From positions 62,001-126,000 of IMG/VR virus record IMGVR_UViG_3300048924_000191: a DNA stretch of 64,000 nt. One strand, written 5' to 3'. A program made the position numbers and the translations under genes. Positions 298-61,097 of this stretch are shown piece by piece. The notes below the pieces were generated by a model. That model did not search any database. It was not told where the DNA came from and saw only the letters and a list, made by a program, of their open reading frames with translations. How positions within the stretch are numbered: the stretch's first letter is position 1; every line of letters starts with the position of its first letter.

Positions 298-330
298 CAT
301 ACAGCCGGGGCGCAATGCCCCGGCTGTATG
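298..330. terminator. Bidirectional hairpin terminator, CATACAG...CTGTATG family
   Basis: CATACAGCCGGGGC-GCAAT-GCCCCGGCTGTATG perfect stem between convergent genes. Confidence 0.85.
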
Positions 331-345
331 TCGTTGCCGTAAGGA

Positions 346-870
346 TTAAGCCTCGGCGTCGAAACCACTCAGGTCAGTGGTAGTCGCCGCTTCATCCAAA
401 GGGACGTCAGCGTCCGGGATGTCCAGGACGGCGGCGTAGGTGCCGGTGTACAGCAAGCTGGACACGTTGGCGACCACGTCGGCCGAACCCGGGGTATCTT
501 CGTTCACTGGGCGAACGATGTTCGACAGAGTGAATTCGGATTCCAGCAGACCCAGAGCGGTAGCGATCTTGGTCTTGACCTGTGGGTCGGTGTCGGAAGC
601 TGCGATCACCACCGGAATATCTTTGGCGGCAGCGATTGCCTGGCCGGAAGCCAGAGCCAGACGGGTGTAGGAGAAAGTCTGCGAACCAGAGAAACCCTGG
701 TTGGCGATTGCGGTGAAGGTCACCGAGGTGTTACGACCGCCAGTACCGGCAGCGGCCGAAGGCGCACCGACGGTAACTTTGGCCAGAGTGGCGTTCAGAC
801 CGGCGTTCGCACTGTTGACCAGTGCCAGGACGTTCTCCTGAGCCGTGATGGACGGGTTGATCTTTGCCAT
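346..870 (-). CDS. Putative virion structural protein (174 aa, MAKINPSIT...)
   Basis: Ala/Thr/Ser-rich beta-type sequence with F.Y.RL motif and C-terminal DLSGFD; upstream GAGA RBS and CCTATGTAG motif. Confidence 0.65.
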   Translation of the reverse strand: MAKINPSITAQENVLALVNSANAGLNATLAKVTVGAPSAAAGTGGRNTSVTFTAIANQGFSGSQTFSYTRLALASGQAIAAAKDIPVVIAASDTDPQVKTKIATALGLLESEFTLSNIVRPVNEDTPGSADVVANVSSLLYTGTYAAVLDIPDADVPLDEAATTTDLSGFDAEA

Positions 871-905
871 GGTATCGATCTCTCGAAAAGTAGCGAGGGA
901 TTTCG

Positions 906-916
906 CTACATAGGAT
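906..916 (-). promoter_or_regulatory. Putative late promoter (TATG core, ATCCTATGTAG)
   Basis: TATG is the phiKZ late start motif; the identical 11-mer recurs at 2882-2892. Confidence 0.45.
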
Positions 917-922
917 TCACGG

Positions 923-958
923 CATAGAGCCCACCTGAGGGCGCAAACCCTCAGGTGG
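923..958 (-). terminator. Hairpin terminator followed by TATGCC
   Basis: CCACCTGAGGG/CCCTCAGGTGG stem just downstream of the 965-1978 stop. Confidence 0.75.
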
Positions 959-964
959 TGAAGA

Positions 965-1978
965 TTACTCTTCTTGCTTAACGCCCAGCAGACCAGCCTG
1001 CTGGCGACGCAGAGCGCGAGACTTGAGCGCTTCCATGGCCTGATACATACCGGCCAGAGCAACGTCATTCTCTTCGCAGTGCATCTCGCCTTGGTTGAAG
1101 TGCTCCAGGCGATGGATCTGTACAGCCAGCAGACTTTCGAAGGTCACGCCGGTGTGGCCGATCTGGTCAACTGGACCGGACTGGAATTGAATCAGGTTGC
1201 CGGTCTGAGGACGGATACCGCCAACGCCTTCAGTGGCGAAACCGTTGATCAGGTAGAAGTCGTACGAGTCAGGGAAGTCGGTAGGAACCATCCGACGGAC
1301 CTGGATGCTGGTATCGATACCCTCGACCTTGTGGGTCGTGATCGGCGCATCTTCCGAGAACTTCGGTGCAGGCTTACCTTCAGCCGGGAAGTCGAACAGA
1401 GTCGACAGCTCATGCTGGAAGCCGTTGGTGTGGTCAGCGATATAAACCGGCACACCGCCCTTACCTGCGTGTTCGACCATCCAGACGTTATCGATCAGGA
1501 TTTCGAACTTGTCGCCGTAGGTGTCGGTGGCGAACTTCACCAGACCGGCCTTGAGCGTTTCCAGCAGCGCAGGACGATCGAAGTCGGCCTTCAGGTCAGC
1601 TTCGGTAACCAGACGAGTCACTTCGGTTTGAAACGCAGCGAAGAATTCTTTCTCTTGCGCTTTCTCACGCTCTACGAACTCAGGGTCCAGGCGTGGATCG
1701 GCCGGTGCCGGGATGTGGTCGTAGCGCTCGGTGTCTTCGATCTCCGCTTGACTGCGGAACCAGATCGGACTATCAACGCTTACGGCAGTGCCAGCAGCAG
1801 CGTAACCGTAGGCCAGTTCACCGGTAGCTTCCAGTCTGACGAATTCATCCGGGGTGATCTGGATGAAGTACTCGACGCCAGTCTTGCGATGACGAACCTT
1901 GTCGCCGCGCGAGTACTTGCTGAGCTTCACAGGAGCTTGTGGTTCCTGGGTTTGTTCTTGCGGTTGGGCTTGTTCCAT
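965..1978 (-). CDS. Multidomain protein: N-terminal DUF1653/SH3-like domain plus C-terminal Tad1-like (signal-sponge) domain
   Basis: C-term IQFQSGP..G.TGVT.E.LL...IHRL..F..G...CEEN..AL.....A...L..R...R...GLLG follows the Tad1 pattern; N-term RGDKVRHRKTG..Y...IWFRS. Confidence 0.65.
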   Translation of the reverse strand: MEQAQPQEQTQEPQAPVKLSKYSRGDKVRHRKTGVEYFIQITPDEFVRLEATGELAYGYAAAGTAVSVDSPIWFRSQAEIEDTERYDHIPAPADPRLDPEFVEREKAQEKEFFAAFQTEVTRLVTEADLKADFDRPALLETLKAGLVKFATDTYGDKFEILIDNVWMVEHAGKGGVPVYIADHTNGFQHELSTLFDFPAEGKPAPKFSEDAPITTHKVEGIDTSIQVRRMVPTDFPDSYDFYLINGFATEGVGGIRPQTGNLIQFQSGPVDQIGHTGVTFESLLAVQIHRLEHFNQGEMHCEENDVALAGMYQAMEALKSRALRRQQAGLLGVKQEE

Positions 1979-2008
1979 GGGAACGATTTCCTTTGGTGGA
2001 TGTGAGGG

Positions 2009-2602
2009 TTAGTACGTCAGGATCAGATTGAGGGCAGTCGGACCTTCGAGCCCAGTGCCTCGAACCTTGGCTTGGCCGATCAGTTCAAGCGACTTAATCG
2101 TACCGGTAATGCTGGTAGCGAACAACGTGCCTGATAGACCAACGTCTTCCAGAACAAATTGCGGCTCGTAGAAACCTGCTTTTGGCGCGCACAACAGATG
2201 AATGATTTCTTGTAACTTGAACTCATCGCCATGCAGACACAAGATAACTGCAGGTTCACTGCCGTGTTTGTTGACCGTAGCGGAGACAATCGTCTCTTCG
2301 ATGGTTTCGATCAACAGGCGATAAGAACGAGAAGCTCCCTCAGGTTCGACGAGCGCGAACTTGTAGCGCTGCTTCTGGAGCTGACCTTCAGTCATTTCAT
2401 GAAGCGTGATCGTCTCACAGTTGGGCCGTTGCCAACCGTTGATATCCTCACCGACATGATGTCGCTCTTGAGCGAGGTCCTCGGATTCGATCTGGATCAA
2501 CTCGCCGTATTCTTCGACCAGTGCTTTCTCGATCGTGTGCATGACGTGACTCTTACCACGTCCGACAGGACCGATGACAGCCACACGGAGGTTGTTATTC
2601 AT
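2009..2602 (-). CDS. Hypothetical protein with N-terminal Walker A-like motif
   Basis: VAVIGPVGRGKS; GGTGAG RBS. Confidence 0.6.
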   Translation of the reverse strand: MNNNLRVAVIGPVGRGKSHVMHTIEKALVEEYGELIQIESEDLAQERHHVGEDINGWQRPNCETITLHEMTEGQLQKQRYKFALVEPEGASRSYRLLIETIEETIVSATVNKHGSEPAVILCLHGDEFKLQEIIHLLCAPKAGFYEPQFVLEDVGLSGTLFATSITGTIKSLELIGQAKVRGTGLEGPTALNLILTY

Positions 2603-2659
2603 GACTCACCTGCATTGAGTATTGGACATCAAATACAGGTCGGATTTAACAAGTTACAG

Positions 2660-2690
2660 CATAGAACGCCGAGGGACGTCTCCCTCGGCT
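2660..2690 (-). terminator. Hairpin terminator plus TATGC
   Basis: GCCGAGGGA/TCCCTCGGC stem, then GTTCTATGC on minus strand. Confidence 0.75.
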
Positions 2691-2888
2691 ATTGACTCTT
2701 TTATCAATACCAAAGCACCGGTGATGAGTCGATACTAAGGTCTACGCTAAACTTCCAGGAAAGCGTATCTAAGGCGGTCTTACCGCGCGTTGCTCAAATC
2801 AGGGAGCTGGACGAGCGCACTCTGCCCTTACTGTGATTCTTGCGATCTTCAAATTGTGAATGAGCTGCGGAACAACATTCTCTACATA
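2690..2888 (-). ncRNA. Candidate structured ncRNA 1 (~200 nt)
   Basis: No plausible ORF; starts at ATCCTATGTAG and ends at a terminator; stems GAATG/CATTC, GCGGT/ACCGC, TACGCT/AGCGTA, GACTC/GAGTC. Confidence 0.45.
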
Positions 2889-2923
2889 GGATATAACAAA
2901 AAAAAAGAAAGAGGCGGTGAGGC

Positions 2924-3274
2924 TCACGCCCCACCAGTCCTCGTGATCGAACAGACTCTTTCGAGCACTCGATCCATGTCCACCTGAGGTACGGATTCCT
3001 CCGTGTGTAGCAGATGGATTTTACCCTCTGTCAAAACGGACTCCGCGTTCTTTAAGCGTACATCTGCAAAGCTCTGCAGTGCGCTGTAGATAAGCGGATT
3101 CGCTACCTCGTAGTACGAGTCCAAAACAACTGCAACTGCTTCCAGATCGCCTCCGGAAGCGTGCAGGGACTGTACATGATCGACGATGCGACAATTGTGT
3201 TTACCCAGCTTAGAGAAGACATCATTCTTCTTCATCGCTGGACTCTTCTCCATCGTCATCTTCAACTCCTTCAT
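2924..3274 (-). CDS. Hypothetical protein (start uncertain, possibly 3235)
   Basis: ORF in operon orientation; followed by hairpin and T-run. Confidence 0.55.
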   Translation of the reverse strand: MKELKMTMEKSPAMKKNDVFSKLGKHNCRIVDHVQSLHASGGDLEAVAVVLDSYYEVANPLIYSALQSFADVRLKNAESVLTEGKIHLLHTEESVPQVDMDRVLERVCSITRTGGA

Positions 3275-3374
3275 TGTTGCTGTCGTCTTCCTGACGCGTG
3301 TTGTAATTCACGAACAACTCTTCAGCAACGTCTGCCGGGTCGAGCGGTTTGGGGTCATCAGGAAGGCGAGACAT
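3222..3374 (-). CDS. 50-aa very acidic protein (not in ORF track)
   Basis: MSRLPDDPKPLDPADVAEELFVNYNTRQEDDSNNEGVEDDDGEESSDEEE; GAGG RBS; fills the gap between neighbours. Confidence 0.65.
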   Translation of the reverse strand: MSRLPDDPKPLDPADVAEELFVNYNTRQEDDSNNEGVEDDDGEESSDEEE

Positions 3375-3386
3375 TTTGAATACCTC

Positions 3387-4208
3387 TTACAGGGCGAAGT
3401 GGTAGAGCTGTCCTACGTCACCGACGTCGAGGAGCGGGTACGAGGTAGCTGATACCGAGAGGACCGGAACGTTAGCCCGCCCGACGTATGCGGAGCGCGA
3501 GAAGGTCATAGTTACGGTGAAGGTCTTTTCACGGCATGGGGTTACCTTGATCGGCAGCCCAATTCCGAAACGATGTAGCACTTCATCTACCGACAATAGA
3601 TACAACTGGTGTTGTTCGATCAGATACAGGTCGTTCTGATGCTTAACGTGGAAGAGACGATTGATTTCGTCTTGCAGATCTTTACGCAGTGCGATTCCGA
3701 AACCTGCTTCGAACCCGTCATTGATTGCTGCATTACGCAGGACGTTGTGCGGGGTGTTCGGGGTGTGGACGTGGTAGGCATGGCCGTAATCCGGGAGTTG
3801 GAAGACCACCTTCCGGAAGTCTCGCAACCACTCCAGAGCACTGACGATGGAAGTTTCCTTCACGCCACTCAGCGCCAGGCCCATGATCCCGTCAACAGGA
3901 GGGTTGTTGAGCACGTCATGGAATTCGACGTGAGGGTATTTACCGATCAACTCCTTCAACTTGCCATCATCGTCGATCGCCGCCCGTGCCAGCTCACGTA
4001 CCTGGTAGTTGCTGGTCGCAGCGTCCAGGTCGGCGATGACTTGCTTGATAGCTTCCGCACGACCTACGGCAATGGTACCGATACCACGGTAACCGATCAC
4101 TAAGTTGCTGATGTTGCGCACCGCTGTTTCTACAGCGTTGAGAGGACGGCGCGGCCAGTTACTTACGGCGTTAACGACACGGCGTTCTTCAGGGGACAGA
4201 TAGTTCAT
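3387..4208 (-). CDS. Hypothetical protein
   Basis: 273-aa ORF, AGGAG RBS, early-type promoter upstream. Confidence 0.75.
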   Translation of the reverse strand: MNYLSPEERRVVNAVSNWPRRPLNAVETAVRNISNLVIGYRGIGTIAVGRAEAIKQVIADLDAATSNYQVRELARAAIDDDGKLKELIGKYPHVEFHDVLNNPPVDGIMGLALSGVKETSIVSALEWLRDFRKVVFQLPDYGHAYHVHTPNTPHNVLRNAAINDGFEAGFGIALRKDLQDEINRLFHVKHQNDLYLIEQHQLYLLSVDEVLHRFGIGLPIKVTPCREKTFTVTMTFSRSAYVGRANVPVLSVSATSYPLLDVGDVGQLYHFAL

Positions 4209-4244
4209 TTGTCTTGCTCCTAATGGATGATGGTTAATCAAGAC

Positions 4245-4277
4245 TACAATGTATTACCAGCATATTTTTAAAGTTAC
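4245..4277 (-). promoter_or_regulatory. Putative early promoter
   Basis: GTAACTTTAAAAAT...TAATACATTGT matches the recurring intergenic motif. Confidence 0.55.
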
Positions 4278-4279
4278 AG

Positions 4280-4316
4280 CATACAGACCTCCTAGGACCG
4301 AAGCCCTAGGAGGTCT
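4280..4316 (-). terminator. Hairpin terminator plus GTATGC
   Basis: AGACCTCCTAGG/CCTAGGAGGTCT 12-bp stem. Confidence 0.8.
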
Positions 4317-4324
4317 ACACACCT

Positions 4325-4553
4325 TTTCTGACCGATACTTCATCCGTTAGCACATTCCCGCCCCGGCCACGAGAGAATATGCTAACGGCTGAGCGCTCAG
4401 TCTCCAGCTAGCCCCGCCGCTCCCCTTATAAGCGACGTGACTGAAGGTCGTCCGGGGGAACGACCTGCGGCGGCTCTACCCCGGGAGAGTCGGGACCCTG
4501 GGAGAGCTTGAATCGTACGGTTTGCCCAGAACCGTCCGAAGCATCCACGCATA
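4325..4553 (-). ncRNA. Candidate structured ncRNA 2 (~225 nt, closed multi-stem)
   Basis: 5' GAUGCUUC pairs with 3' GAAGUAUC; long internal stems; G-U wobbles valid on the minus strand; ATTATATG upstream, terminator downstream. Confidence 0.6.
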
Positions 4554-4586
4554 TAATAGTAAACGCTCAGTAAAAGTTTACTGCGA

Positions 4587-4994
4587 CTACCAGCCCATGG
4601 TTCTTGGGCGATTGAGCCACTCTTCGTAGACCTTTCCGTTAGCGGTGGTCTTACGTCCGCTCTTGTAGAACCCACTGGTCAGAAAGGCAGTTTGACTCGG
4701 TTTGTTCTCAGGTCTGATCCATGCCTGCCCTGCCTTGTTTGAAAAGTATTGACGGATGAACTGTGCCGCGTATCGCTTACCGCGGTGTTTTGGATCGATG
4801 TAGATAGACCCTACGCGATAATATCCGCCATCGCCTTTCATCGGCATGATGAACCCGATCGTCTCTCCAGTCGGGAGGAAGATGAGTTCCATGCCGTCAA
4901 GTCCAGCCTTGAGAGATTCTGGTCCAAGGAACGGGTCTTTCATGGCCAGATCAAAGAGTCTCTGTTTGGCGCCTTCTACTGTTTCTTTGTTCAT
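4587..4994 (-). CDS. GNAT-family acetyltransferase
   Basis: IYIDPKHRGKRYA (motif A), N..SQ..F...GF (motif B). Confidence 0.8.
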   Translation of the reverse strand: MNKETVEGAKQRLFDLAMKDPFLGPESLKAGLDGMELIFLPTGETIGFIMPMKGDGGYYRVGSIYIDPKHRGKRYAAQFIRQYFSNKAGQAWIRPENKPSQTAFLTSGFYKSGRKTTANGKVYEEWLNRPRTMGW

Positions 4995-5083
4995 GATTGG
5001 AGAACCGGGGAGGTGGTGACATAGCAGTCAAGACAAAAAAAAAGAAAGCCCAGTATAACCTTGCGGCTATACTGGGCGATTGC

Positions 5084-9970: not shown

Positions 9971-9974
9971 CAGC

Positions 9975-10022
9975 AAAAAAAAGAAAGCTACAGCACGGGC
10001 GCGATGCCCGTGCTGTATGCCG
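9975..10022. terminator. Bidirectional terminator
   Basis: TACAGCACGGGC/GCCCGTGCTGTA stem; TATGCCG on plus side, T-run on minus side. Confidence 0.85.
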
Positions 10023-10322
10023 TCAATTGACAAATAGGTAACTGGACGTAACACCACGGAATCCAATCAGGTCTTTCTTAGCCCCACGCATTCCATCGGC
10101 CGAGACCTTAGTCAATACTTCAAACTTAGGTCCAGCCTTGTAGAGTCTTTGCAACAACACGTTGGGACATTTGCCTGCATCGAGTTGTGCGATGAGTTCA
10201 CCCAGCTCTTTGTGGATGTCGACCGCGGTAGTTGCGTAGATACGTCCAGTGTCCTCATGAATCAGAACAAACATCCCTCGTTTGTTGAGGTCTGTTTTCT
10301 TCAATGTGTTTTCGACATTCAC
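10023..10322 (-). CDS. Small degenerate GIY-YIG-like protein
   Basis: GMFVLIHEDTGRIY...L..GK.PN.LLQ pattern; canonical Tyr/Arg residues altered. Confidence 0.45.
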   Translation of the reverse strand: MNVENTLKKTDLNKRGMFVLIHEDTGRIYATTAVDIHKELGELIAQLDAGKCPNVLLQRLYKAGPKFEVLTKVSADGMRGAKKDLIGFRGVTSSYLFVN

Positions 10323-13053: not shown

Positions 13054-13058
13054 TACAG

Positions 13059-13092
13059 CATACAGCCGGTGGGGAGACCCACCGGCTGTATG
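13059..13092. terminator. CATACAG...CTGTATG hairpin terminator
   Basis: Perfect stem after spanin genes. Confidence 0.85.
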
Positions 13093-13096
13093 TCGT

Positions 13097-14975: not shown

Positions 14976-14984
14976 AGTGTTACC

Positions 14985-22804: not shown

Positions 22805-22849
22805 GTTTTGTATCTCCATTTAGAAAAGTTGCGGCATAAAGAAAAGAAA

Positions 22850-23504: not shown

Positions 23505-23511
23505 TAAGTAG

Positions 23512-24798: not shown

Positions 24799-24818
24799 CA
24801 ATAACTTCCTTTGTAAGT

Positions 24819-24848
24819 AGGGCGGGGAAATCCCCGCCCTGTATGCCG
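24819..24848. terminator. Hairpin terminator
   Basis: AGGGCGGGGA/TCCCCGCCCT then GTATGCCG. Confidence 0.75.
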
Positions 24849-25982
24849 TTAACGTCCGCCGAAGCCTGCGCGCTGGCGACCTTTGCGGAATTCGAGGTTC
24901 TCGTGCCAGTTCAGAGCTTCTGCGAGGGTGAACTTGTTGCGACCTTCTGGGAAGACCACCTCGTGTTCGCAGTGCATCATTTCGCGAACCGCGATCGCCT
25001 GCTCCAGATCCAGGTGTTTGAACTCCAGGATGTCGAAGCAACGACCACCACGGGTGAGCGCCTCGTCGACCTTGTGGAGACTTTCCAGGTTGGTCGAGAT
25101 GATGATCTTGGTATCACGAGAAACGATACCGTTTGCCGCGCTGAGCATCGCCTGCATGTTGGAGTTACCCAGATCACGAGCTTCGACCAACTTGTCGGAG
25201 TCTTCGGTAACGAAGATTGCACCAGAACGCAGACCGCGGATGTAGTCAGCCAGAGATGGGTTCAGGAGAACGTCTTCACGGTCAGCCATGTGGGCGTTAT
25301 CGTCAGCGAAGTTTGCGACGTGCAGAAGCTCGGTAATCCAGTTGGACTTGCCGGTGCCTGGCGGACCGATCAGCAGGACGACGTTGGAGTTGGACGCCTT
25401 GAACTCCTGCCAGAAAGCGGCCGGTAATTGACGCGGTTCGAAGTACGGGTACATCTTCTGGATATCGGAGATCGCTTGCCGTGGAGCAATCGGTTCCCAG
25501 CCCGGGATGATACCGCCGTTACCGTTCAGGGTCAGACGGGTCATGACCGGCACTTTATCCGACTTGGCCAGTTCGGCGAATTGACCGGTGACGTAGTCCA
25601 CCAGCTTCTTACCGCCCAGCAGGTCGTAGAACGCTTTGGTGTTCTCGTTCTTGACGTTCACCAGGGCACCGAACACTTCATCGTCAGAAACGATCAGGCG
25701 GCCCATGATGACGCGAACGAAGCGCAGACCTGCGGGCTTGAGGATCTCTTCTTCGAAGATCCGCAAGATGACCGTGTCGTTGTCTTCCGGTTTGATATTC
25801 AGCGGAACGTTGGTCTCCAGCTTCTTCTGCACGCAGTTGATACCACGGCCTGCAAAGAACAGGCGAGATACGTCGTACAGGTTGTCGCCGCGCAGCAGCG
25901 CCAGACGCTCGGAGAAGAAGTGGATCTCTTCCAGCAGTTTCTGGGAGGCTTGTGGTTCACGGAAAATATTCAGATTAGTCAT
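24849..25982 (-). CDS. AAA+ ATPase
   Basis: GPPGTGKS, FVTEDSD (Walker B), IISTN...DEALTRGGRCFD (second region of homology). Confidence 0.88.
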   Translation of the reverse strand: MTNLNIFREPQASQKLLEEIHFFSERLALLRGDNLYDVSRLFFAGRGINCVQKKLETNVPLNIKPEDNDTVILRIFEEEILKPAGLRFVRVIMGRLIVSDDEVFGALVNVKNENTKAFYDLLGGKKLVDYVTGQFAELAKSDKVPVMTRLTLNGNGGIIPGWEPIAPRQAISDIQKMYPYFEPRQLPAAFWQEFKASNSNVVLLIGPPGTGKSNWITELLHVANFADDNAHMADREDVLLNPSLADYIRGLRSGAIFVTEDSDKLVEARDLGNSNMQAMLSAANGIVSRDTKIIISTNLESLHKVDEALTRGGRCFDILEFKHLDLEQAIAVREMMHCEHEVVFPEGRNKFTLAEALNWHENLEFRKGRQRAGFGGR

Positions 25983-25991
25983 GCTGCTTCC

Positions 25992-30540: not shown

Positions 30541-30568
30541 AGTAATGTAGGATCATACAAAAATAAAA
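30541..30568 (-). promoter_or_regulatory. Putative early promoter of the phosphatase-RKK array-AAA unit
   Basis: TTTTATTTTTGTATGATCCTACATTAC. Confidence 0.6.
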
Positions 30569-30570
30569 GA

Positions 30571-30602
30571 CATACAGCCCGGGGTTTCCCCCGGGCTGTA
30601 TG
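30571..30602. terminator. CATACAG...CTGTATG hairpin terminator
   Basis: Perfect stem. Confidence 0.85.
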
Positions 30603-30609
30603 CTGCTAG

Positions 30610-36327: not shown

Positions 36328-36342
36328 TTAACTCTCCTTAAT

Positions 36343-36375
36343 GGCATAAACCACCTACCGGTTAGGGTAGGTGGT
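36343..36375 (-). terminator. Hairpin terminator plus TTTATGCC
   Basis: ACCACCTACC/GGTAGGTGGT. Confidence 0.8.
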
Positions 36376-38731: not shown

Positions 38732-38780
38732 AAAAAAAAGAAGCGCTATCCAGCAGGCACATGCCTGCTGGATAGCTATG
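38732..38780 (-). terminator. Hairpin terminator with T-run
   Basis: GCTATCCAGCAGGCA/TGCCTGCTGGATAGC. Confidence 0.85.
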
Positions 38781-38784
38781 TTCT

Positions 38785-40028: not shown

Positions 40029-40031
40029 ATA

Positions 40032-40075
40032 GCATAAAACACCACCACTACCTGGGATGTCCCAGGTAGTGGTGG
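40032..40075 (-). terminator. Hairpin terminator plus TTTTATGC
   Basis: CCACCACTACCTGGGA/TCCCAGGTAGTGGTGG. Confidence 0.85.
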
Positions 40076-42538: not shown

Positions 42539-42596
42539 ATGACCTCCCTGACAAAAAGAAGAAAAGAACCGGGAGCCTACGCCCCCGGTCTTCGAG

Positions 42597-52604: not shown

Positions 52605-52634
52605 AGACTTCCCCTGTAATTTAGGTTATTACGA

Positions 52635-52666
52635 CATACAGCGCGGGGATGTCCCCGCGCTGTATG
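52635..52666. terminator. CATACAG...CTGTATG hairpin terminator
   Basis: Perfect stem. Confidence 0.85.
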
Positions 52667-52894
52667 CTACTTCATGTGCGGTTGTTCGAAGAACGTCTTC
52701 ACGGCATGGTCTACGCCTTGCTGTTCGTAAGACTTGCCTTCTTTCGGCGGACGACCTTCCAATTTACGCCATTCTTTATCCAGATGATCGAGATGTTTGT
52801 TCAACTCGATGAACTCTTTCTTCCGATAAAGTTCCAGACCGTGAGAACCTGGCACCAGCCAAATGTCGCCGTACTTCACTGCGTCTCGGTACAT
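52667..52894 (-). CDS. Hypothetical protein
   Basis: AAGGGG RBS. Confidence 0.6.
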   Translation of the reverse strand: MYRDAVKYGDIWLVPGSHGLELYRKKEFIELNKHLDHLDKEWRKLEGRPPKEGKSYEQQGVDHAVKTFFEQPHMK

Positions 52895-52897
52895 GGG

Positions 52898-53329: not shown

Positions 53330-53333
53330 GCCG

Positions 53334-53615: not shown

Positions 53616-53685
53616 TTTTACTCCTAATCGTTGGTATCGAGGTTCGGCCATTCCGAACCTCTTCCGAATCAACTGTATCTTTGGG

Positions 53686-55296: not shown

Positions 55297-55342
55297 GGTG
55301 GAGACTCTCCTTTAAGGGTATCCTATTTTACGAAGTCGTAAC

Positions 55343-55382
55343 AAAATAAAGACAGCGTGGGCGGGGACTCCGGTCCCCGCTT
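55343..55382 (-). terminator. Hairpin terminator
   Basis: GCGGGGAC/GTCCCCGC followed by T-rich run. Confidence 0.7.
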
Positions 55383-55385
55383 CGC

Positions 55386-55562
55386 TCAGTAGCCGTTGTC
55401 TTCTTCGTCGGCTGCAGTTGGCCAGCGATAGCTGGGCATGGTGCGCAGATCAACACCGCCGTTACGCTCGGCAGCTTCATCCATAAGCTGCTGCGCTGCT
55501 GCGTCGACAGGATCGATGGCCTTCTCTTCTTCGTCGAAGAAAGGTTCGTTGTTACGGTTCAT
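55386..55562 (-). CDS. 58-aa acidic protein (not in ORF track)
   Basis: MNRNNEPFFDEEEKAIDPVDAAAQQLMDEAAERNGGVDLRTMPSYRWPTAADEEDNGY; AAGGAA RBS. Confidence 0.7.
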   Translation of the reverse strand: MNRNNEPFFDEEEKAIDPVDAAAQQLMDEAAERNGGVDLRTMPSYRWPTAADEEDNGY

Positions 55563-55633
55563 GGTGTACTTCCTTTATGTTGCGAGATAGGTGGATTACA
55601 TTTCACTCTCGTAATGTGTGAGTGAAAACCGTT

Positions 55634-56056
55634 TTACTTTGCGACCGAGTTGAAGAACCCGATGAGTTCCATGACCTCGAGGACGGTCAGTTCTTTGTAG
55701 ACCTCCAACACTGCAGCCGCTTCTTTGATCTTGCCCTCGCGGATGAGCTCCCTCCACGGATAAGTCTTACCATCGATCGATTCACGATCGCGGATGTACT
55801 GGACGTTGGCAAGTACCTCCATCATGCTACCGACGGAGTGAGCACGGATGCGCAGGTGGCGACCGACAGATCCCACGTTGTACGGCACACGCATCATGTC
55901 AGGTCGTGGGCCCTGACGGTTAAACAGATCGGTGAAACGAGTATCTGCATTGTTGGCGGCATCTATCGTCAACTTGGCCATTTCCTCCAAGGCATCGACA
56001 ATAGTGTTGGTAAGCTCGGTCATGCGGCCGGCAGCTTGGGTGGTGAAGTCTTGCAT
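55634..56056 (-). CDS. Hypothetical protein
   Basis: GGAG RBS. Confidence 0.7.
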   Translation of the reverse strand: MQDFTTQAAGRMTELTNTIVDALEEMAKLTIDAANNADTRFTDLFNRQGPRPDMMRVPYNVGSVGRHLRIRAHSVGSMMEVLANVQYIRDRESIDGKTYPWRELIREGKIKEAAAVLEVYKELTVLEVMELIGFFNSVAK

Positions 56057-56077
56057 GTTGTTTTACTCCCGTGTGCG

Positions 56078-56113
56078 GCATAAAGAACCAGGAGTAGCCG
56101 AAGCTACCCCTGG
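56078..56113 (-). terminator. Hairpin terminator plus TTTATGCCG
   Basis: CCAGG(A)GTAGC/GCTAC(C)CCTGG. Confidence 0.75.
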
Positions 56114-56120
56114 CGGAAAA

Positions 56121-56885
56121 TCAACCGTTATCAGCGCCATGGGCGATGAAGCGCTTACGGCGCTCACCGGCAACAGCGTGTTTGACCAACAGACGAGACC
56201 AGTTCTCGTACTGTCCTTCGTGGAACTTGGTATCGCGGACAATGTCGCCGATGTGTTCCCAATGCGGTTCGCGTACTTCGGTCGGCGAGTTCGGTACGAA
56301 GATCGCTTTGTCCGACACGGTGACTTCGAACAACACCGCGACGTGAGTCAGACCGACGTCGTCGCTTGGGTCATAGATGAAGCCCACCGACTTGAGATCC
56401 CCCACCGCTGTCTCGGTAATGTCGATGCTGTTACGACCTGTCCCGTCTTGGCTTGGTTCGCCAGGCATTTCGATACGGATCTCCTGAATGAACTCACTCC
56501 AGGCAGCGTTCCAGAGAGACTGCTCCAGAGTCAGCACATGGTTGTCGTACTGAAACGCTTTACTGTCTGGGTGTCCGCCCAGACCGATCGAGAACTGGCC
56601 GTCCAGGCGGGCTTCGCCGTCATCCCGAGCGGGACGTTGGTAGACCATCACTCGATCACCCGATCGGTTGGTAATCTTGATGTACGGGATGAAGTGAAGT
56701 TCAGTAGTTGACTTCTCCAACATGAACCGGGGTTTGATGGAGTAGTGACCGGAACAGATCACTTCATGCAACGCGGCGTAGACGTCTTGGATCGAAACGT
56801 CGCCGACGACTTTGAGTTGTTTGAGCATCGGGATAACCTCTACGCCGATGCAGGCTTCGGATTTCTTAGGGATAGTGCTAGCCAC
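56121..56885 (-). CDS. Nudix-fold phosphoesterase (COG4112-like)
   Basis: FIPY, YQR....GEARL....SIGLGGH, EF.QE, VG.THVAV, ENWS. Confidence 0.8.
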   Translation of the reverse strand: MASTIPKKSEACIGVEVIPMLKQLKVVGDVSIQDVYAALHEVICSGHYSIKPRFMLEKSTTELHFIPYIKITNRSGDRVMVYQRPARDDGEARLDGQFSIGLGGHPDSKAFQYDNHVLTLEQSLWNAAWSEFIQEIRIEMPGEPSQDGTGRNSIDITETAVGDLKSVGFIYDPSDDVGLTHVAVLFEVTVSDKAIFVPNSPTEVREPHWEHIGDIVRDTKFHEGQYENWSRLLVKHAVAGERRKRFIAHGADNG

Positions 56886-56901
56886 GGTACTTTCCTTTTT
56901 G

Positions 56902-57939
56902 TCAGATGCGAAAATCGCGTTCGGCTGAGATGGCGATTGGCTCGCCAGTATATGGAGTGCGTTCTACCCGCAGCTCTTTGATCCAGTCGCGTTGCTTGAT
57001 CGACAGGTTGTTGACCACACTCTCAACGATCTCGCCAAGGAGACGCGCTGGGAACTGATCGAACGAGGTCTTGCTCAGACCCACCATGTCTTCGGTCTCG
57101 TGATCGGAAGTGACGAACTCCACCCGCTCGTCTTGATATACGACGCCGATGCGGAACTGCTCATCGCCACTCACCACTTCGACCTCGACTCCCCGAACGT
57201 AGATGACCGAGTTGGTCTTCACTTCTGGAGTCGGTCGCTTCTTCATGCTGTTGATCGCGGTCATCAGGTGCGGCATCATCTGCGCGAAGACCTGCTCGCG
57301 ACTGACGTTGGCGTCGATCCGGACGAGCGCATCTTGTTCGCCAATACACAACAGGTTGCGGTTGTTGTACTGACCCCATGGACTTGCGATATCGCGATAA
57401 GCCCGGCAGATCGCTTGTTTGTACTCGGCAGGCTTATCGTCGTAGTAGTCCGCTGGCCGACCCGACTTCTCGCGTTCCAGACGCAGACGCTCTTCTGCGA
57501 CTTCATAGTCGACATCGAAAATGAACGTCAGGTCAATGTTGAAACAGTCTTTGCGAACCGCAGCGTCGATGTTGTGGAAGTCAAGCCAATCCACACCACC
57601 GACTACATGTTGATAAACGAACGACGAGTAGTGGTACCGATCGGACACCACCACCGCACCGCGAGTCAAGGCGGGGATGATGACTTCACGGATCAGTTGT
57701 GCTCGTGCGGCGTAGTTCAGCAACAGTTCGGTGATTGGGTGTTTGGTTTCACCTGTTTCGACCGGTTGTTTGTTGAGTTCGCGGATCTTCTCGGCGAACA
57801 TCGTACCACCTGGTTCACGGACTTCCACTACTTCCAGACCGTGGTCACGGAAGAGCTTTACCACATTACCGCGCTGTCCGGTTTTACCGGACATGTCCGG
57901 ACCATCGAGTACAACGAGCATACCTGGGTATTGTTTCAT
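56902..57939 (-). CDS. tmk: Thymidylate kinase with C-terminal extension
   Basis: DGPDMSGKT, REPGGT, AARAQ, SDRY..SS..YQ. Confidence 0.9.
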   Translation of the reverse strand: MKQYPGMLVVLDGPDMSGKTGQRGNVVKLFRDHGLEVVEVREPGGTMFAEKIRELNKQPVETGETKHPITELLLNYAARAQLIREVIIPALTRGAVVVSDRYHYSSFVYQHVVGGVDWLDFHNIDAAVRKDCFNIDLTFIFDVDYEVAEERLRLEREKSGRPADYYDDKPAEYKQAICRAYRDIASPWGQYNNRNLLCIGEQDALVRIDANVSREQVFAQMMPHLMTAINSMKKRPTPEVKTNSVIYVRGVEVEVVSGDEQFRIGVVYQDERVEFVTSDHETEDMVGLSKTSFDQFPARLLGEIVESVVNNLSIKQRDWIKELRVERTPYTGEPIAISAERDFRI

Positions 57940-57986
57940 GAGGACATCTCCTGGTTATCCAGAAGATTCCTCATGTCGGTAAGTGT

Positions 57987-58367
57987 TTACTTGACGATGA
58001 ACGGCATCAAGTCATTGAACTTGACGGCAGTATCGCCATTGGCCAGATTGGCGTGGAACCCACCCTTTCCATTACCGAGGATGGAGAGGATCTTGTCGGC
58101 CTTGCCTTTCTTTGGTCCGGAACGATACGCGACCATCATCCCTTCGATTGGGGTCCATGGATCGCAAGGCGCAACGACGGTTTCGTCATGTGGTTCGTCT
58201 TCTGGGGTATTCAGGGATACTTCCAGACGAGCGATGATTTCGGAGTTCATACTCCGGTGGTGGGTGCGGGCAGCTTCGGCGATACGTTCGCGCATGCCGT
58301 CAGGAAGCCTGACGACAAACTTGTCTGCAGTACGGGAAGAATAAATAGCTTGTTTGAGAGGACGCAT
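57987..58367 (-). CDS. amrZ: AmrZ-like Arc/ribbon-helix-helix protein with replaced C-terminal domain
   Basis: [49 protein letters not shown] matches the Pseudomonas AmrZ N-domain. Confidence 0.85.
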
Positions 58368-58401
58368 TCTAAAACTCCATTGGATTGTGGTTACACAGGG
58401 C

Positions 58402-58430
58402 AGTAATGTAGTATCAAAAGAATCTTTGAC
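58402..58430 (-). promoter_or_regulatory. Putative early promoter
   Basis: TTTTGATACTACATTAC. Confidence 0.6.
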
Positions 58431-58432
58431 AG

Positions 58433-58464
58433 CATACAGCCGGGGCGTTTGCCCCGGCTGTATG
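58433..58464. terminator. CATACAG...CTGTATG hairpin terminator
   Basis: Stem identical to 298-330, loop differs. Confidence 0.85.
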
Positions 58465-58470
58465 TCGTGA

Positions 58471-59478
58471 TCACTTGAGGGACTTGAACAGAATCTCGGC
58501 CAACCCCTTCTCCATGTCAGCGAGGATACGGTTCTCGCCGATCTCCATGCCGTGGAACTCACCTGCGACTGGGAAGAGATTCAGCAGATGTGCAATGTCT
58601 TCGTCATCGTCAGGGAACCTCGAGATCCACCAGCGGTAATCGTCGGTATCGTCAAGGTACCATTCACGGTCGCCGATGTCGAAGCATTGATCCAACAGCC
58701 CCGACAGCTTGAGCATCAGCTCACAACACTTCTTGGCTTCCGGCAGGGTGAGTGCCTGGATATAAGAATCCATGCCGCCGTAAAGGGGCTTACGCCTCTC
58801 CAGAACCTTCGAGTGAGGAAGCGTACCGATCTTCCCACAGACCAGCGTGAGGTTGGTGAACTTCACGGCACTGTGGTCGATCTTCAACGCGTAATCAGCG
58901 TACACGCCCTCGGCCAATGGCTTGGCATGACGGTAGGCTTCTTTAGGACTAGGTAACCGTTTAGCTTCTTCGTAGATCTTCTCAAGAGCCTGGGTCATGT
59001 TGGCACGTAGCTTGAGGTAGTTGATCAACCACCGACCGAACGCGCCAAAGTTCTCTTCAACGCTAGACAACCACCGATGGTTCGGCCAGTGCCAGAGATG
59101 CATCAGCGTTGCCGAGTTACCGAGGATGATGGTCTTCTTCTTGAGCATCTCTTCGGTGATCTTGGAAGAGTCGTGCTTGAGTTCAGAAATCATCTTCTCA
59201 GCAGCGGCTTTCTCTTCAGGCGTGGGGAAGCCGAGGATGCGTTTGAGGACATCACCAAAAGATTCGAAGGACTCTTCAGGGTCATTACCCTTGTCGTCTT
59301 TCTTCTCAGCACGGTCAGGAAGCTTCTCCCACCATTCGGGATCTTCCTTACGCTTCTTCTTGTCCTCGTCGTACCACTCCTTCGCTACCTGCTGAGAGAT
59401 ATTGCGAGATTTGGCGAACTCGGCGTCATGCGCGGCCATCCGCATGAAGCGAGCTTGGGACTTACTATTACTCGGCAT
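58471..59478 (-). CDS. Putative virion head protein with charged propeptide
   Basis: Charged N-terminus then EESFES (S-x-E site); mature part resembles helicase C-terminal domain; TATG upstream. Confidence 0.6.
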
Positions 59479-59543
59479 TTTCGCTCCCCAGAACAAAAAA
59501 AAAGAAGGAATGTGCGGGGTGTCGAGCACCCCGCTTCATATCC

Positions 59544-59882
59544 TTACCCGCAGACCTTGATCAGGTTCAGCTTACGGAAGACCACCACGATTGCCAAGCA
59601 TGCAGCCTGGTTAACCGTGATGTAGTAGAACGAGAACGAGAGGCCGAAGAAGTAGGTAACTCCCAGCACTATCAGCAGGATCGGAAAGCTGATCAGCAGG
59701 TAGGACTTGGGAGTGGTGGTGAAGCCGGTGAGTCCGGCCGCTACCGAATAGACCAACGCAGTCGGTCGGAACATACAGTACGTCGGGTCCTTATACGCCT
59801 TGAGATTGGCGTAGATCGTGAAGCCCGCAGTACCGAGCAACAGGACCAGGATGAACAGATCGATTGCGAGGGTGATGCTCAT
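59544..59882 (-). CDS. Multi-TM membrane protein
   Basis: Hydrophobic throughout; CCTAGGAGGACA RBS. Confidence 0.75.
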   Translation of the reverse strand: MSITLAIDLFILVLLLGTAGFTIYANLKAYKDPTYCMFRPTALVYSVAAGLTGFTTTPKSYLLISFPILLIVLGVTYFFGLSFSFYYITVNQAACLAIVVVFRKLNLIKVCG

Positions 59883-59921
59883 GGTGTCCTCCTAGGACAT
59901 TGGGTTGTGTTGCCTTGGTGA

Positions 59922-60026
59922 TTAAGCCGGCCGTTTAGCCAGCTCAGTATTGATCGCCTGGATGACGTAGTGTGCAGCTACTACGGAGACGGTCAAAATT
60001 GCTACGCTGCGGATGATACCGAACAT
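59922..60026 (-). CDS. 34-aa membrane peptide (not in ORF track)
   Basis: MFGIIRSVAILTVSVVAAHYVIQAINTELAKRPA; GGAG RBS. Confidence 0.55.
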   Translation of the reverse strand: MFGIIRSVAILTVSVVAAHYVIQAINTELAKRPA

Positions 60027-60099
60027 GGTTTTTAACTCCATAAAGTGGCGCCCACTCCCATTGGGAATGTATTACGATAGGTTTTTTAACTTCGATTTA

Positions 60100-60228
60100 T
60101 TACTTACCGCATACTTCGACGCACCAGCCTTTGCGGGCCAGTTGATAGTCGGCGGCTTCGTCGAACAGACCGCAGCCGAGAAGAACAGCCAACGACATAC
60201 CGCACAGAACGAGCTTGAAAGGTTTCAT
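60100..60228 (-). CDS. 42-aa putative lipopeptide (not in ORF track)
   Basis: MKPFKLVLCGMSLAVLLGC...; GAGGA RBS. Confidence 0.5.
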   Translation of the reverse strand: MKPFKLVLCGMSLAVLLGCGLFDEAADYQLARKGWCVEVCGK

Positions 60229-60596
60229 GGGTGATCCTCAGGAATGATGGTCATTTGCGCTGTGCCTCTGTGTGGGTCGAGGCCGTGGTAGAGCGCAATG
60301 AAGCGGCAACGTTTGTCCCGCTTGTTGTATTCGATCAGCGCATGTAGGCGATCCCCCAGCGCTACCTGCACATCACCGCCGATGGAGTGGCGGTCGAGGT
60401 AAACTTTCCCGTTGACCAAAGCGAACGGGTTGATCGTGAAATACGGAATATCGTAGAGCATCACGACGTGCTCAGTTCCGTTGGTGGATACGAACGTCGC
60501 AAACGCATTCGCTACGCCGTCTTCGCCGGTGTGGGTATCGTGGTACCGGCCGCCGCTGGAGATCAATGCCTGAACCAGCTGCTGAACTTTGTTCAT
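60225..60596 (-). CDS. Hypothetical protein
   Basis: GAGGA RBS before MNKVQ. Confidence 0.65.
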   Translation of the reverse strand: MNKVQQLVQALISSGGRYHDTHTGEDGVANAFATFVSTNGTEHVVMLYDIPYFTINPFALVNGKVYLDRHSIGGDVQVALGDRLHALIEYNKRDKRCRFIALYHGLDPHRGTAQMTIIPEDHP

Positions 60597-60653
60597 GTTG
60601 TCAATCCTCAAGAGGGGGAAAGTCGGATAGCCGCAACTATCCGACCGCGGCGG

Positions 60654-60965
60654 TTAGAAAGCTACTTCTTTAACGTGGTCTTGATACATGAAGAACACGG
60701 GCATAGCCAGAACCACGATTACGATCGAGCTCCACAGGCACCAGGTCATACCCAGCAGCCAAGTGATGACGATGGAGAAGACCCACAGACCGATCCACAC
60801 CTTCTTGGAGAAGGCGGGATGGGACCACAGGACCTGACCTGCCAGAGTGGCGAAGAACTCTTTGCTGGTCCAGCCGTCACGTCCAGCGCAGAACGAGGTA
60901 GAGTAGATGATGAACATCAGGCCGATCATGCCGACGATGTAGGATACGATATCGAAAGTTGCCAT
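60654..60965 (-). CDS. Multi-TM membrane protein
   Basis: Three hydrophobic segments; CCTAGGAGGACA RBS. Confidence 0.75.
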   Translation of the reverse strand: MATFDIVSYIVGMIGLMFIIYSTSFCAGRDGWTSKEFFATLAGQVLWSHPAFSKKVWIGLWVFSIVITWLLGMTWCLWSSIVIVVLAMPVFFMYQDHVKEVAF

Positions 60966-61026
60966 GGTGTTGTCCTCCTAGGACTATGATTGATCCGGAA
61001 TGGATCATGGTTGTGTTGATTCATGA

Positions 61027-61055
61027 CGACTATGTATCATCGTAAAAAGTTTAAC
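61027..61055 (-). promoter_or_regulatory. Putative strong early promoter
   Basis: AAACTTTTTACGATGATACATAGTCG. Confidence 0.7.
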
Positions 61056-61061
61056 TTCAGT

Positions 61062-61097
61062 CATACACACCTACCTGCTTACGCAGGTAGGTGTGTA
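61062..61097 (-). terminator. Hairpin terminator plus TATG
   Basis: TACACACCTACCTGC/GCAGGTAGGTGTGTA. Confidence 0.85.

What the first reader, a model, noticed from the sequence alone, without database searches (positions are those of the whole stretch)
298..61097. Terminator family defined by hairpin plus TATG rather than a U-tract
Seen: about 15 intergenic hairpins are flanked by TATG(C/T). Five have self-complementary CATACAG...CTGTATG bases (298, 13059, 30571, 52635, 58433), giving the motif on both strands even between co-directional genes. Copies at 298 and 58433 have identical stems. Many lack a U-run, and inner stems vary while staying paired. Inference: a sequence-specific signal for the phage multisubunit RNA polymerases (termination, processing, or re-initiation, as TATG is also the late start motif).
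Basis: partly seen in the sequence, partly recalled or inferred. Interest (0 to 1): 0.6.

Follow-up and report, generated by a model that had tools for sequence, protein, structure and literature searches.

The report
phiKZ-type hairpin-TATG transcription terminators
The hairpins followed by TATG are real and far above chance, and they are this uncultivated giant phage's version of a terminator motif (GC-rich hairpin + TTATKYYGT) already mapped by RNA 3'-end sequencing in the related phages phiKZ and 201phi2-1, so they are an informative new example of a known signal, not a new kind.

Summary
The window (bases 62001-126000 of a 243-kb phiKZ-like jumbo phage from root metagenomes) holds 15 intergenic hairpins with TATG(C/T) at the 3' base. 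Five have CATACAG...CTGTATG bases, and those at 298 and 58433 have identical stems.

Genome-wide the motif is longer: C-T-(G/C)-TATG-Y-Y-G-T. 37 of 53 TATGYYGT copies abut a strong hairpin (0.66 expected). TATGR copies show no such link.

The tails lie just after stop codons on the sense strand. At convergent gene pairs they occur on both strands, where no gene could be driven. Stems show G-U over A-C (69:18) on the sense strand, which points to RNA hairpins.

The tail matches the published phiKZ terminator consensus (...BYTTATKYYGT, 61 mapped terminators). Published phiKZ 3' ends fall at UAU/UAUGY(Y). The same tail is enriched in five other phiKZ-like phages of 38-57% GC.

Best reading: transcription terminators of the phiKZ type. 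The palindromic copies are bidirectional or extended-stem versions. Re-initiation at this TATG is not supported. Specificity for the phage RNA polymerase is untested, and partly contradicted because 201phi2-1 terminators work in uninfected host cells.

Novelty: new member of a known kind.

The parts
294..334 (.). Palindromic terminator between convergent genes. Stem CATACAGCCGGGGC, loop gcaat. Tails TATGTCGT (+) and TATGCTGC (-).
919..958 (-). Hairpin 931-958 with tail ctcTATGCCGT, 6 nt after a stop codon. A second TATG (TATGTAG, promoter-like) follows 10 nt later.
2656..2689 (-). Hairpin 2668-2689 with tail ttcTATGCTGT.
4276..4323 (-). Hairpin 4285-4316 with tail ctgTATGCTGT, followed by an early-promoter-like motif. 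The strain variant 4316 T>C keeps a G-U pair on the sense RNA.
9975..10023 (.). Mixed bidirectional terminator after the helicase gene. Tail TATGCCGT on +, tail GCTTTCTTTTTTTT on -.
13055..13096 (.). Palindromic terminator between co-directional (-) genes. Tails TATGCTGT (-, sense) and TATGTCGT (+). Its 34-nt hairpin (13059-13092) is identical to the one at genome 199111-199144.
24813..24849 (+). Hairpin with tail ctgTATGCCGT on the strand antisense to both flanking genes.
30567..30606 (.). Palindromic terminator. Tails TATGTCTT (-, sense) and TATGCTGC (+).
36341..36375 (-). Hairpin 36350-36375 with tail tTATGCCAT, 6 nt after a stop codon. The next start codon is 22 nt on.
38733..38784 (.). 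Mixed module. U-tract tail on - (sense), TATGTTCT on + (antisense).
40029..40075 (-). Hairpin 40042-40075 with tail tttTATGCTAT, followed by an early-promoter-like motif.
52631..52670 (.). Palindromic terminator. Tails TATGTCGT (-, sense) and TATGCTAC (+).
56075..56113 (-). Hairpin 56088-56113 with tail cttTATGCCGC. This matches the phiKZ tail YTTATKYYG exactly.
58429..58468 (.). Palindromic terminator with the same 14-bp stem as W298 and loop gttt. Tails TATGCTGT (-, sense) and TATGTCGT (+).
61058..61097 (-). Hairpin 61064-61097 with tail gtgTATGACTG (the weakest tail), followed by an early-promoter-like motif.
5030..5077 (-). Companion class: hairpin with a classical tail CTTTCTTTTTTTTTG (U-tract terminator).
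42545..42590 (-). Companion class: hairpin with a U-rich tail (ttcttttcttctttttg).
59495..59534 (-). Companion class: hairpin with tail ccttctttttttttg.

Best explanation
These are transcription terminators of the phiKZ (chimallivirus) type. On the sense transcript a GC-rich RNA hairpin forms a few nucleotides after the stop codon. Transcription then ends inside the conserved tail C-U-(G/C)-U-A-U-G-Y-Y | G-U.

By homology with the mapped phiKZ ends, the RNA 3' end lies at UAU to UAUGYY, 6-9 nt past the stem. The short tail takes the place of a long U-tract. U-A-U gives a few weak base pairs in the hybrid. Y followed by G fits the pyrimidine(-1)/G(+1) signature of elemental pauses of multisubunit RNA polymerases (inference).

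Copies with CATACAG...CTGTATG bases carry the full tail on both strands. At convergent genes they end transcripts from both sides. Between co-directional genes they lengthen the stem and can stop antisense read-through.

A second terminator class in the same genome uses a classical tail CTTTCTTTTTTTTTG. Some modules carry one tail type on each strand.

Shown here: motif, hairpin association, position, orientation, RNA-level asymmetry, and conservation in relatives. Inferred: that RNA ends there in this phage, and how release happens.
For: The phage is phiKZ-like.
- It encodes split RNAP beta/beta'-type subunits (PHROG 3295 at E 7e-163, PHROG 2987 at E 1e-126).
- It has a gp123 homologue.
- Its helicase is at most 43% identical to those of jumbo phages of the phiKZ group.

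Motif. The logo of 54 hairpin-adjacent TATGs is C(83%) T(85%) G/C TATG Y(93%) Y(96%) G(67%) T(85%). It has the same layout as the published phiKZ consensus 5'-BCCYCCCCHWWDGGGRRGGBYTTATKYYGT-3' from 61 mapped terminators (PMC10914365).

Association with hairpins. 37 of 53 TATGYYGT copies abut a strong hairpin vs 0.66 expected. TATGR shows none.

Position and orientation.
- 49 of 61 TATG tails are on the strand of a gene that ends just upstream, mostly 0-18 nt after the stop.
- At convergent pairs, 6 hairpins have TATG tails on both strands and 5 have TATG on one strand and a U-tract on the other.

RNA level. In sense-strand stems G-U outnumbers A-C 69:18 (P = 3e-8), and 18:4 in the TATG class. 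One natural strain variant (4316 T>C) keeps a G-U pair on the sense RNA only. Stem covariation: 23 vs 10.0 +/- 2.1 double changes, 0/500 shuffles.

Mapped ends in phiKZ. I placed 34 TTS coordinates from Table S4 of bioRxiv 10.1101/2023.10.13.562163 on phiKZ DNA. By the script's nearest-TATK tally, 13 of the 21 ends within 12 nt of a TATK fall at +2..+5 from the T. These include both directions of palindromic CATAA...TTATG hairpins (T012/T013, T018/T019, T051/T052, T059/T060).

Family-wide conservation.
- TATG is enriched at hairpin ends in phiKZ, RP12, Eowyn, FLC9 and Deimos-Minion, at 38-57% GC (P 5e-4 to 2e-7). The pooled logo again shows Y Y G T.
- A covariance model built only from this window's copies hits RP12 (E 8e-4), FLC9 and Eowyn. 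It also hits, weakly, two published phiKZ terminators, T011 and T046.
- A terminator with the TATGCCGT tail but an unrelated stem follows the helicase gene or operon in this phage, RP12, Eowyn and Deimos-Minion.
Against: - No RNA data exist for this phage. No RNA run holds it, so 3' ends here are inferred by homology only.
- ONT-cappable-seq cannot separate termination from 3' processing, and its ends are good to about 2 nt.
- The tail has only about 3-4 U in 8 nt, so by the textbook model it should terminate poorly unless pausing or a factor helps.
- My gene calls are home-made.
- The hairpin sets missed a few loci, among them W298. This was repaired, so counts differ slightly between calls.
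Confidence: 0.8

Rival explanations
1. The hairpin-adjacent TATG is a late promoter core (TSS at G, as in phiKZ). The unit would then be a terminator-promoter pair, or a re-initiation site, for the downstream gene.
For: TATG with the G as start site is the phiKZ nvRNAP late promoter (PMC4666361), bound by gp123 (PMC12809450). A gp123 homologue is present here. Some tails are followed by a ribosome-binding site and a start codon 22-30 nt on, with no other obvious promoter (W36350, W56088). TATG is depleted in coding sequence on both strands.
Against: The tails occur on both strands at convergent gene pairs, where no gene lies downstream. YYGT is conserved only in hairpin-linked TATGs. The 61 non-hairpin TATGs upstream of genes have A (41%) at the next base and no YYGT, and TATGR has no hairpin link. 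In 59 phiKZ TSS rows (P008-P066), none starts at the terminator's own TATG. P016, P049 and P054 start 5-25 nt further on, P049 and P054 at a second TATG. The same tandem layout is seen here at W931.
Confidence: 0.1
2. The sites are RNA processing or stabilising elements. Transcripts read through and are then cut or trimmed back to a protective hairpin, with UAUGYYGU as a nuclease or RNA-binding-protein site.
For: Long-read 3' ends do not separate termination from processing. The hairpins are RNA-level. A specific single-stranded tail is what a sequence-specific endonuclease would need.
Against: Eight 201phi2-1 terminators blocked downstream reporter expression in a terminator trap in uninfected cells, though which of them carry the phiKZ-like motif A was not seen (PMC11512511). 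In palindromic copies the tail can pair into the stem, which suits co-transcriptional action better than a single-stranded nuclease site. The tail does not fit the RNase E preference known to me (own knowledge).
Confidence: 0.08
3. The palindromes act as DNA: cruciform or hairpin promoters (as for N4 virion RNAP), protein-binding sites, or small mobile repeats.
For: Several copies share identical stems. One 34-nt hairpin occurs twice (W13059 and genome 199111).
Against: G-U over A-C asymmetry on the sense strand (69:18) is not expected for DNA-level palindromes. Stems differ freely in sequence while the tail is fixed. Flanks beyond the motif are unrelated. The sites sit right after stop codons.
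Confidence: 0.02

Closest known systems
phiKZ conserved terminator motif (Putzeys et al. 2024, PMC10914365) and motif A of 201phi2-1 terminators (PMC11512511)
   Same: GC-rich stem-loop, then a tail Y-T-x-TAT-G/K-Y-Y-G-T. It lies just 3' of genes. Palindromic bidirectional forms occur at convergent genes. It coexists with T-run tails and is often followed by an early promoter. The host phage has two split multisubunit RNAPs.
   Different: The stem consensus here is CAGCCGGGGC-like, not CCCTCCC. The base before TAT is G/C, not T. G after TAT is nearly fixed (61 of 83 TATN), where phiKZ has K. The genome is 53% GC, so the tail is no longer U-rich. No RNA ends have been mapped here.
Canonical bacterial intrinsic terminators (hairpin + U-tract)
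   Same: A stable RNA hairpin right after the gene, with the RNA end 6-9 nt past the stem (in phiKZ). Bidirectional versions exist whose upstream flank is complementary to the tail. A true U-tract class exists in the same genome.
   Different: The tail is a specific word with about 3-4 U in 8 nt instead of a U-run. The G and the YYGT are conserved across genomes of 38-57% GC.
phiKZ nvRNAP late promoter TATG (PMC4666361; PMC12809450)
   Same: The same four bases. The word is depleted elsewhere in the genome.
   Different: Promoter TATGs have no hairpin and no YYGT. Transcripts start there, whereas they end at the terminator TATG.
T7 RNAP class II (sequence-specific) pause/termination signal (own knowledge)
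   Same: A conserved DNA word contributes to stopping a phage polymerase.
   Different: T7 RNAP is single-subunit, that signal needs no hairpin, and the sequence is unrelated.
Consensus elemental pause of multisubunit RNAPs, G(-10)Y(-1)G(+1) (own knowledge)
   Same: With the end at YY, the next base is G. Positions -10/-11 are G-rich (72% and 61%).
   Different: Pausing was not tested here. The G-rich positions are also simply part of the stem.

Membership tests
phiKZ-type terminator (hairpin + YTTATKYYGT) | Stable GC-rich stem-loop immediately upstream of the tail | tested here: met
   37 of 53 TATGYYGT copies have a hairpin of dG <= -12 ending within -8..+5 nt (0.66 expected). The median MFE of the 48 nt upstream is -24.6 kcal/mol.
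phiKZ-type terminator (hairpin + YTTATKYYGT) | Tail consensus B-Y-T-TAT-K-Y-Y-G-T | tested here: met
   The logo is C-T-(G/C)-TATG-Y-Y-G-T. It differs only at the base before TAT, which is G/C here and T in phiKZ. Some copies match exactly, e.g. W56088 cttTATGCCG.
phiKZ-type terminator (hairpin + YTTATKYYGT) | Lies downstream of a gene on the transcribed strand, with bidirectional forms at convergent genes | tested here: met
   49 of 61 tails are sense, mostly 0-18 nt after the stop. 14 of 17 convergent-junction hairpins carry a TATG tail on at least one strand.
phiKZ-type terminator (hairpin + YTTATKYYGT) | RNA 3' ends map within the tail | not testable with these tools
   No RNA run holds this phage. 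In phiKZ itself, by the nearest-TATK tally, 13 of the 21 published ends lying within 12 nt of a TATK fall at +2..+5 from the T.
phiKZ-type terminator (hairpin + YTTATKYYGT) | Phage of the phiKZ-like lineage with split multisubunit RNAPs | tested here: met
   The tail is also found in five other genera of the group.
Canonical intrinsic terminator | U-tract (several consecutive U) directly after the hairpin | tested here: not met
   TATG-class tails have fixed U only at -2, 0 and +2. T5 or longer runs are absent in 12 of the 15 window copies. A separate class (22 strand records, all sense) does meet this feature.
phiKZ late promoter | TATG placed upstream of a gene so that the G can be the start, with no requirement for a hairpin | tested here: not met
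   Tails occur on both strands at convergent junctions. Hairpin-linked TATGs form a distinct TATGY(YGT) population. In phiKZ no TSS sits at a terminator's own TATG in the 59 rows read.

The most novel reading that the evidence does not exclude
The tail may not be a degenerate U-tract. It may be a DNA word read by the phage polymerase itself. The non-template TATG, the same four bases that the beta-like subunit (gp123 family) binds at late promoters, would be caught during elongation. That would hold the enzyme 6-9 nt past the hairpin so that a GC-rich tail can still release. One word would then mark both starts and stops, told apart by the hairpin and YYGT. This would explain why TATGYYGT is kept from 38% to 57% GC, and why TATG is purged from coding sequence.
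Probability: 0.15. Interest if true: 0.75.

Novelty: new member of a known kind. Interest (0 to 1): 0.35.

Why it matters
The phiKZ terminator motif was described in AT-rich phages, where its tail passes for a U-rich stretch and was filed as 'intrinsic'. In this 53% GC relative the U-richness is gone but TATGYYGT stays. The same holds in Ralstonia, Burkholderia, Klebsiella and Erwinia jumbo phages. So the conserved thing is a specific word, not a weak hybrid.

That gives three practical uses:
- a simple rule for annotating transcription units in uncultivated chimalliviruses (hairpin + TATGYYGT = stop; TATGR without a hairpin = candidate late start);
- a set of compact, possibly polymerase-tuned terminators;
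- a sharp, testable question about how the non-canonical jumbo-phage RNAPs terminate, which the papers read here describe only as a sequence motif.

Tried and rejected
- Megablast of 20 kb against GenBank phages: no match. No close relative was therefore available for compensatory-change analysis at orthologous sites.
- The search for related loci in IMG/VR with the gene next to W58433: one relative at 32% identity, not useful.
- Rfam (gathering threshold) and ARAGORN on the window: nothing.
- Sequencing runs: 17 runs hold at least part of the stretch and none is on record as RNA. One wastewater run guessed to be RNA holds only 0.06 of the sampled words.
- Read laying on window 1-6000 with four DNA runs gave strain variants at about 96-97% identity. 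Only 40 of 189 differences were listed, so conservation of the terminators against neutral expectation could not be scored. One informative change (4316) was found.
- RNAalifold on the MAFFT alignment of the 20 window copies gave no structure, because six copies were misaligned. I supplied the structure, built a model and re-aligned.
- Supplements of the two journal papers are not held. The bioRxiv supplement was used instead.
- TATG-pocket residues of phiKZ gp123: 3 of 9 are identical in this phage's homologue, no better than the overall 28% identity, so inconclusive.
- AR9, whose nvRNAP uses a different promoter: hairpin tails are TTATT-like and TATG is not enriched (6 of 65). At 27% GC this says little.
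- I looked for a split of terminator class by promoter class (TATG vs U-tract after early-like promoters). Both classes follow early-like promoters, so the idea of one tail per polymerase is not supported.
- Mobile-repeat idea rejected: flanks are unrelated and stems differ.

Full report
**What the window is**

The window is bases 62001-126000 of a 243,378-bp virus record with direct terminal repeats. It is 53% GC. Megablast finds no match among GenBank phages.

Several results place it in the phiKZ group:
- Its helicase is at most 43% identical to those of phiKZ-group jumbo phages: Serratia/Klebsiella, Burkholderia FLC9, Xanthomonas, Ralstonia RP12 and Erwinia.
- The genome encodes split RNA polymerase beta/beta'-type subunits. 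Pfam hits are weak, but PHROG 3295 and 2987 match at E 7e-163 and 1e-126.
- It has a homologue of phiKZ gp123 at 28% identity, E 4.5e-52.

The DNA turns up in root, rhizosphere and plant metagenomes from many studies.

**Check of the observation**

The five named hairpins are exactly as described. A scan for intergenic hairpins of dG <= -12 kcal/mol, using my own gene calls, gives 15 loci in the window with TATG within -8..+5 nt of the stem end. The last ends at 61097.

Genome-wide there are 97 intergenic strong hairpins. 61 strand-records carry such a TATG; 49 are on the sense strand of a gene ending just upstream and 12 are antisense. 22 carry a run of five or more T, and all of these are sense. 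An earlier pass of the same pipeline dropped a few loci, including W298, because of a filter. Counts therefore differ slightly between calls.

TATG is the most enriched tetramer at hairpin 3' bases, 54 against 10.7 expected.

The signal is longer than TATG. The logo is C-T-(G/C)-T-A-T-G-Y-Y-G-T.
- 37 of the 53 TATGYYGT copies in the genome sit at the base of a strong hairpin (0.66 expected).
- TATGY is linked to hairpins (59 against 3.7 expected). TATGR is not (4 against 3.4).
- After TAT the next base is G in 61 of 83 cases.

TATG is also the second most under-represented tetramer, at observed/expected 0.62. 33% of its copies lie in the 8.7% of the genome that is intergenic. Against synonymous-codon shuffles it is halved in coding sequence on both strands: 283 vs 590 and 98 vs 210. 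AAAA, TTTT, GAGG and CTAG are similarly depleted, so this alone is not specific.

**What the elements are**

Position and orientation are those of terminators. Most tails start 0-18 nt after a stop codon on the same strand.

The convergent gene pairs are decisive against a pure promoter reading. There, 6 hairpins have TATG tails on both strands, 5 have TATGCCGTC on one strand and CTTTCTTTTTTTT on the other, and only 2 have neither.

The hairpins act as RNA on the sense strand. Within stems, G-U outnumbers A-C by 69 to 18 (P = 3e-8), and by 18 to 4 in the TATG class. Both strands were scanned in the same way. In a related strain seen in two metagenomes, the one listed change inside a terminator (4316 T>C) keeps a G-U pair on the sense RNA but makes an A-C mismatch on the other strand.

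I built a covariance model from the 20 window copies and re-aligned them to it. There are more double-sided changes than in shuffles (23 vs 10.0 +/- 2.1, 0 of 500), and 78% of cells are paired against 33-49% when partners are slid. That alignment is fitted to the model, and both strands of the palindromic loci are in it.

**Comparison with what is known**

Putzeys et al. 2024 mapped 133 phiKZ termination regions by ONT-cappable-seq. They found that 61 share 5'-BCCYCCCCHWWDGGGRRGGBYTTATKYYGT-3', a stem-loop followed by a 'TTAT region' (PMC10914365). The 201phi2-1 study found a motif A (n = 59) that 'strongly resembles' it. It also showed that eight terminators work in a terminator trap in uninfected P. 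chlororaphis, with longer stems being stronger (PMC11512511).

The tail here differs from the phiKZ tail only at the base before TAT.

I placed 34 published phiKZ TTS coordinates on the phiKZ sequence (Table S4 of bioRxiv 10.1101/2023.10.13.562163; loci L016 and L011). By the script's nearest-TATK tally, 13 of the 21 ends that lie within 12 nt of a TATK fall at +2 to +5 from the T, that is UAU, UAUGY or UAUGYY. This is 6-9 nt past the stem. Both directions of the palindromic CATAA...TTATG hairpins are used in phiKZ (T012/13, T018/19, T051/52, T059/60). That supports bidirectional use of the CATACAG...CTGTATG copies here.

The same tail is the top-enriched word at hairpin ends in 42-50 kb samples of phiKZ, Ralstonia RP12, Klebsiella Eowyn, Burkholderia FLC9 and Erwinia Deimos-Minion. 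These span 38-57% GC, with P from 5e-4 to 2e-7, and YYGT appears again in the pooled logo.

The model built from this window alone hits RP12 (E 8e-4), FLC9 and Eowyn. It also hits, weakly, the published phiKZ terminators T011 and T046.

A terminator with an unrelated stem but the same TATGCCGT tail follows the helicase gene or operon in this phage, RP12, Eowyn and Deimos-Minion.

**Promoter or re-initiation?**

In phiKZ the late promoter is TATG with the G as the start (PMC4666361). It is bound in the non-template strand by gp123, in a pocket that is incomplete in the transcribing complex (PMC12809450).

In this genome, 61 non-hairpin TATGs lie upstream of genes. About half of these are 15-55 nt from the start codon. 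They have A or T at the next base and no YYGT. They look like late promoters and form a different population from the hairpin-linked ones.

In 59 phiKZ TSS rows, none starts at a terminator's own TATG. Three start 5-25 nt further on, two of them at a second TATG. The same tandem layout is seen here at W931. Re-initiation at the terminator TATG is therefore not supported, although dual use at a few sites (W36350, W56088) cannot be excluded.

**Mechanism**

Shown:
- an RNA hairpin together with a fixed tail;
- the RNA end lies inside the tail in phiKZ;
- such terminators work with a host polymerase in 201phi2-1.

Inferred:
- U-A-U supplies a short weak hybrid;
- with the end at YY the next base is G, and positions -10/-11 are G-rich. 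This is the pyrimidine(-1)/G(+1) signature of elemental pauses of multisubunit polymerases (own knowledge), so a pause is placed where the hairpin can act;
- the palindromic copies add a 5' ...ACRRCAUA that can pair with the tail and lengthen the stem. In 201phi2-1 longer stems went with stronger termination.

The more novel idea is that the phage polymerase reads TATG in the non-template strand as it does at promoters. It fits the conservation across GC content. It is weakened by three results:
- the host-RNAP result for 201phi2-1;
- the closed pocket in the transcribing complex;
- both tail classes follow early-type promoters.

Pocket-residue conservation (3 of 9) and the AR9 contrast were uninformative.

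**Verdict**

The interpretation as a terminator family is right. The elements are a new member of a known kind. The added value of this window is that, in a GC-rich relative, the conserved element is clearly the word TATGYYGT and not U-richness. Specificity for the phage polymerases and the release mechanism remain open and testable.

Noticed in passing
window 4253, 6449, 13034, 30549, 38677, 40010, 58410, 60071, 61036 (all -) and 63973 (+): A promoter-like motif GTTAAA-N~12-(G)ATACAT(T/A) lies 38-72 nt upstream of most of these start codons (189 nt at 60071). It often sits 15-25 nt after a TATG-type terminator. About 25 copies occur genome-wide. Its layout recalls phiKZ early (virion RNAP) promoters (TTTAAG..TATATTAC).
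   Followed up: partly
window 4270-4548 (-): A 279-nt stretch between a TATG and the W4285 terminator contains no accepted ORF. It folds at -132 kcal/mol, z = -4.6 against dinucleotide shuffles. It is a candidate structured ncRNA or long 3'UTR. There is no Rfam match.
   Followed up: partly
window 3377/3404-4205: In related strains (runs X4 and X7, about 96-97% identical elsewhere) the gene at 3387-4208 is replaced by about 810-830 unrelated letters of similar length. This is a swapped cassette bounded by the intergenic region at 4209.
   Followed up: no
window 5030-5077, 9975-9988, 38733-38744, 42545-42590, 59495-59534; genome-wide 22 strand records: A second terminator class has a stereotyped classical tail CTTTCTTTTTTTTTG. 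In every mixed bidirectional module seen (5 at convergent pairs, 2-3 between co-directional genes), the U-tract faces the - strand and TATGCCGTC faces the + strand. This is unexplained.
   Followed up: partly
window 22805-23511, 14563-14984, 25983-26304: Long stretches (707, 422 and 322 nt) have no gene that passed my coding-score filter. They may hold small or atypical genes, or RNAs.
   Followed up: no
whole genome (G000): Besides TATG/CATA, the tetramers AAAA, TTTT, GAGG and CTAG are about halved in coding sequence relative to synonymous-codon shuffles. This is consistent with avoidance of terminator-like T-runs and internal Shine-Dalgarno sites.
   Followed up: partly
G000:C1:9163-9196, 13250-13281, 62298-62330, 120433-120464; 75059-75092 and 199111-199144: Four terminators share the identical 14-bp stem CATACAGCCGGGGC, and two share an identical 34-nt hairpin, although their flanks are unrelated. 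This suggests concerted evolution or copying of terminator units within the genome.
   Followed up: partly
The look-up of sequencing runs on window 52000-61500: The phage or close strains occur in root, rhizosphere, plant and soil metagenomes from at least eight separate studies (share of words 0.2-1.0). No RNA data set holds it.
   Followed up: no
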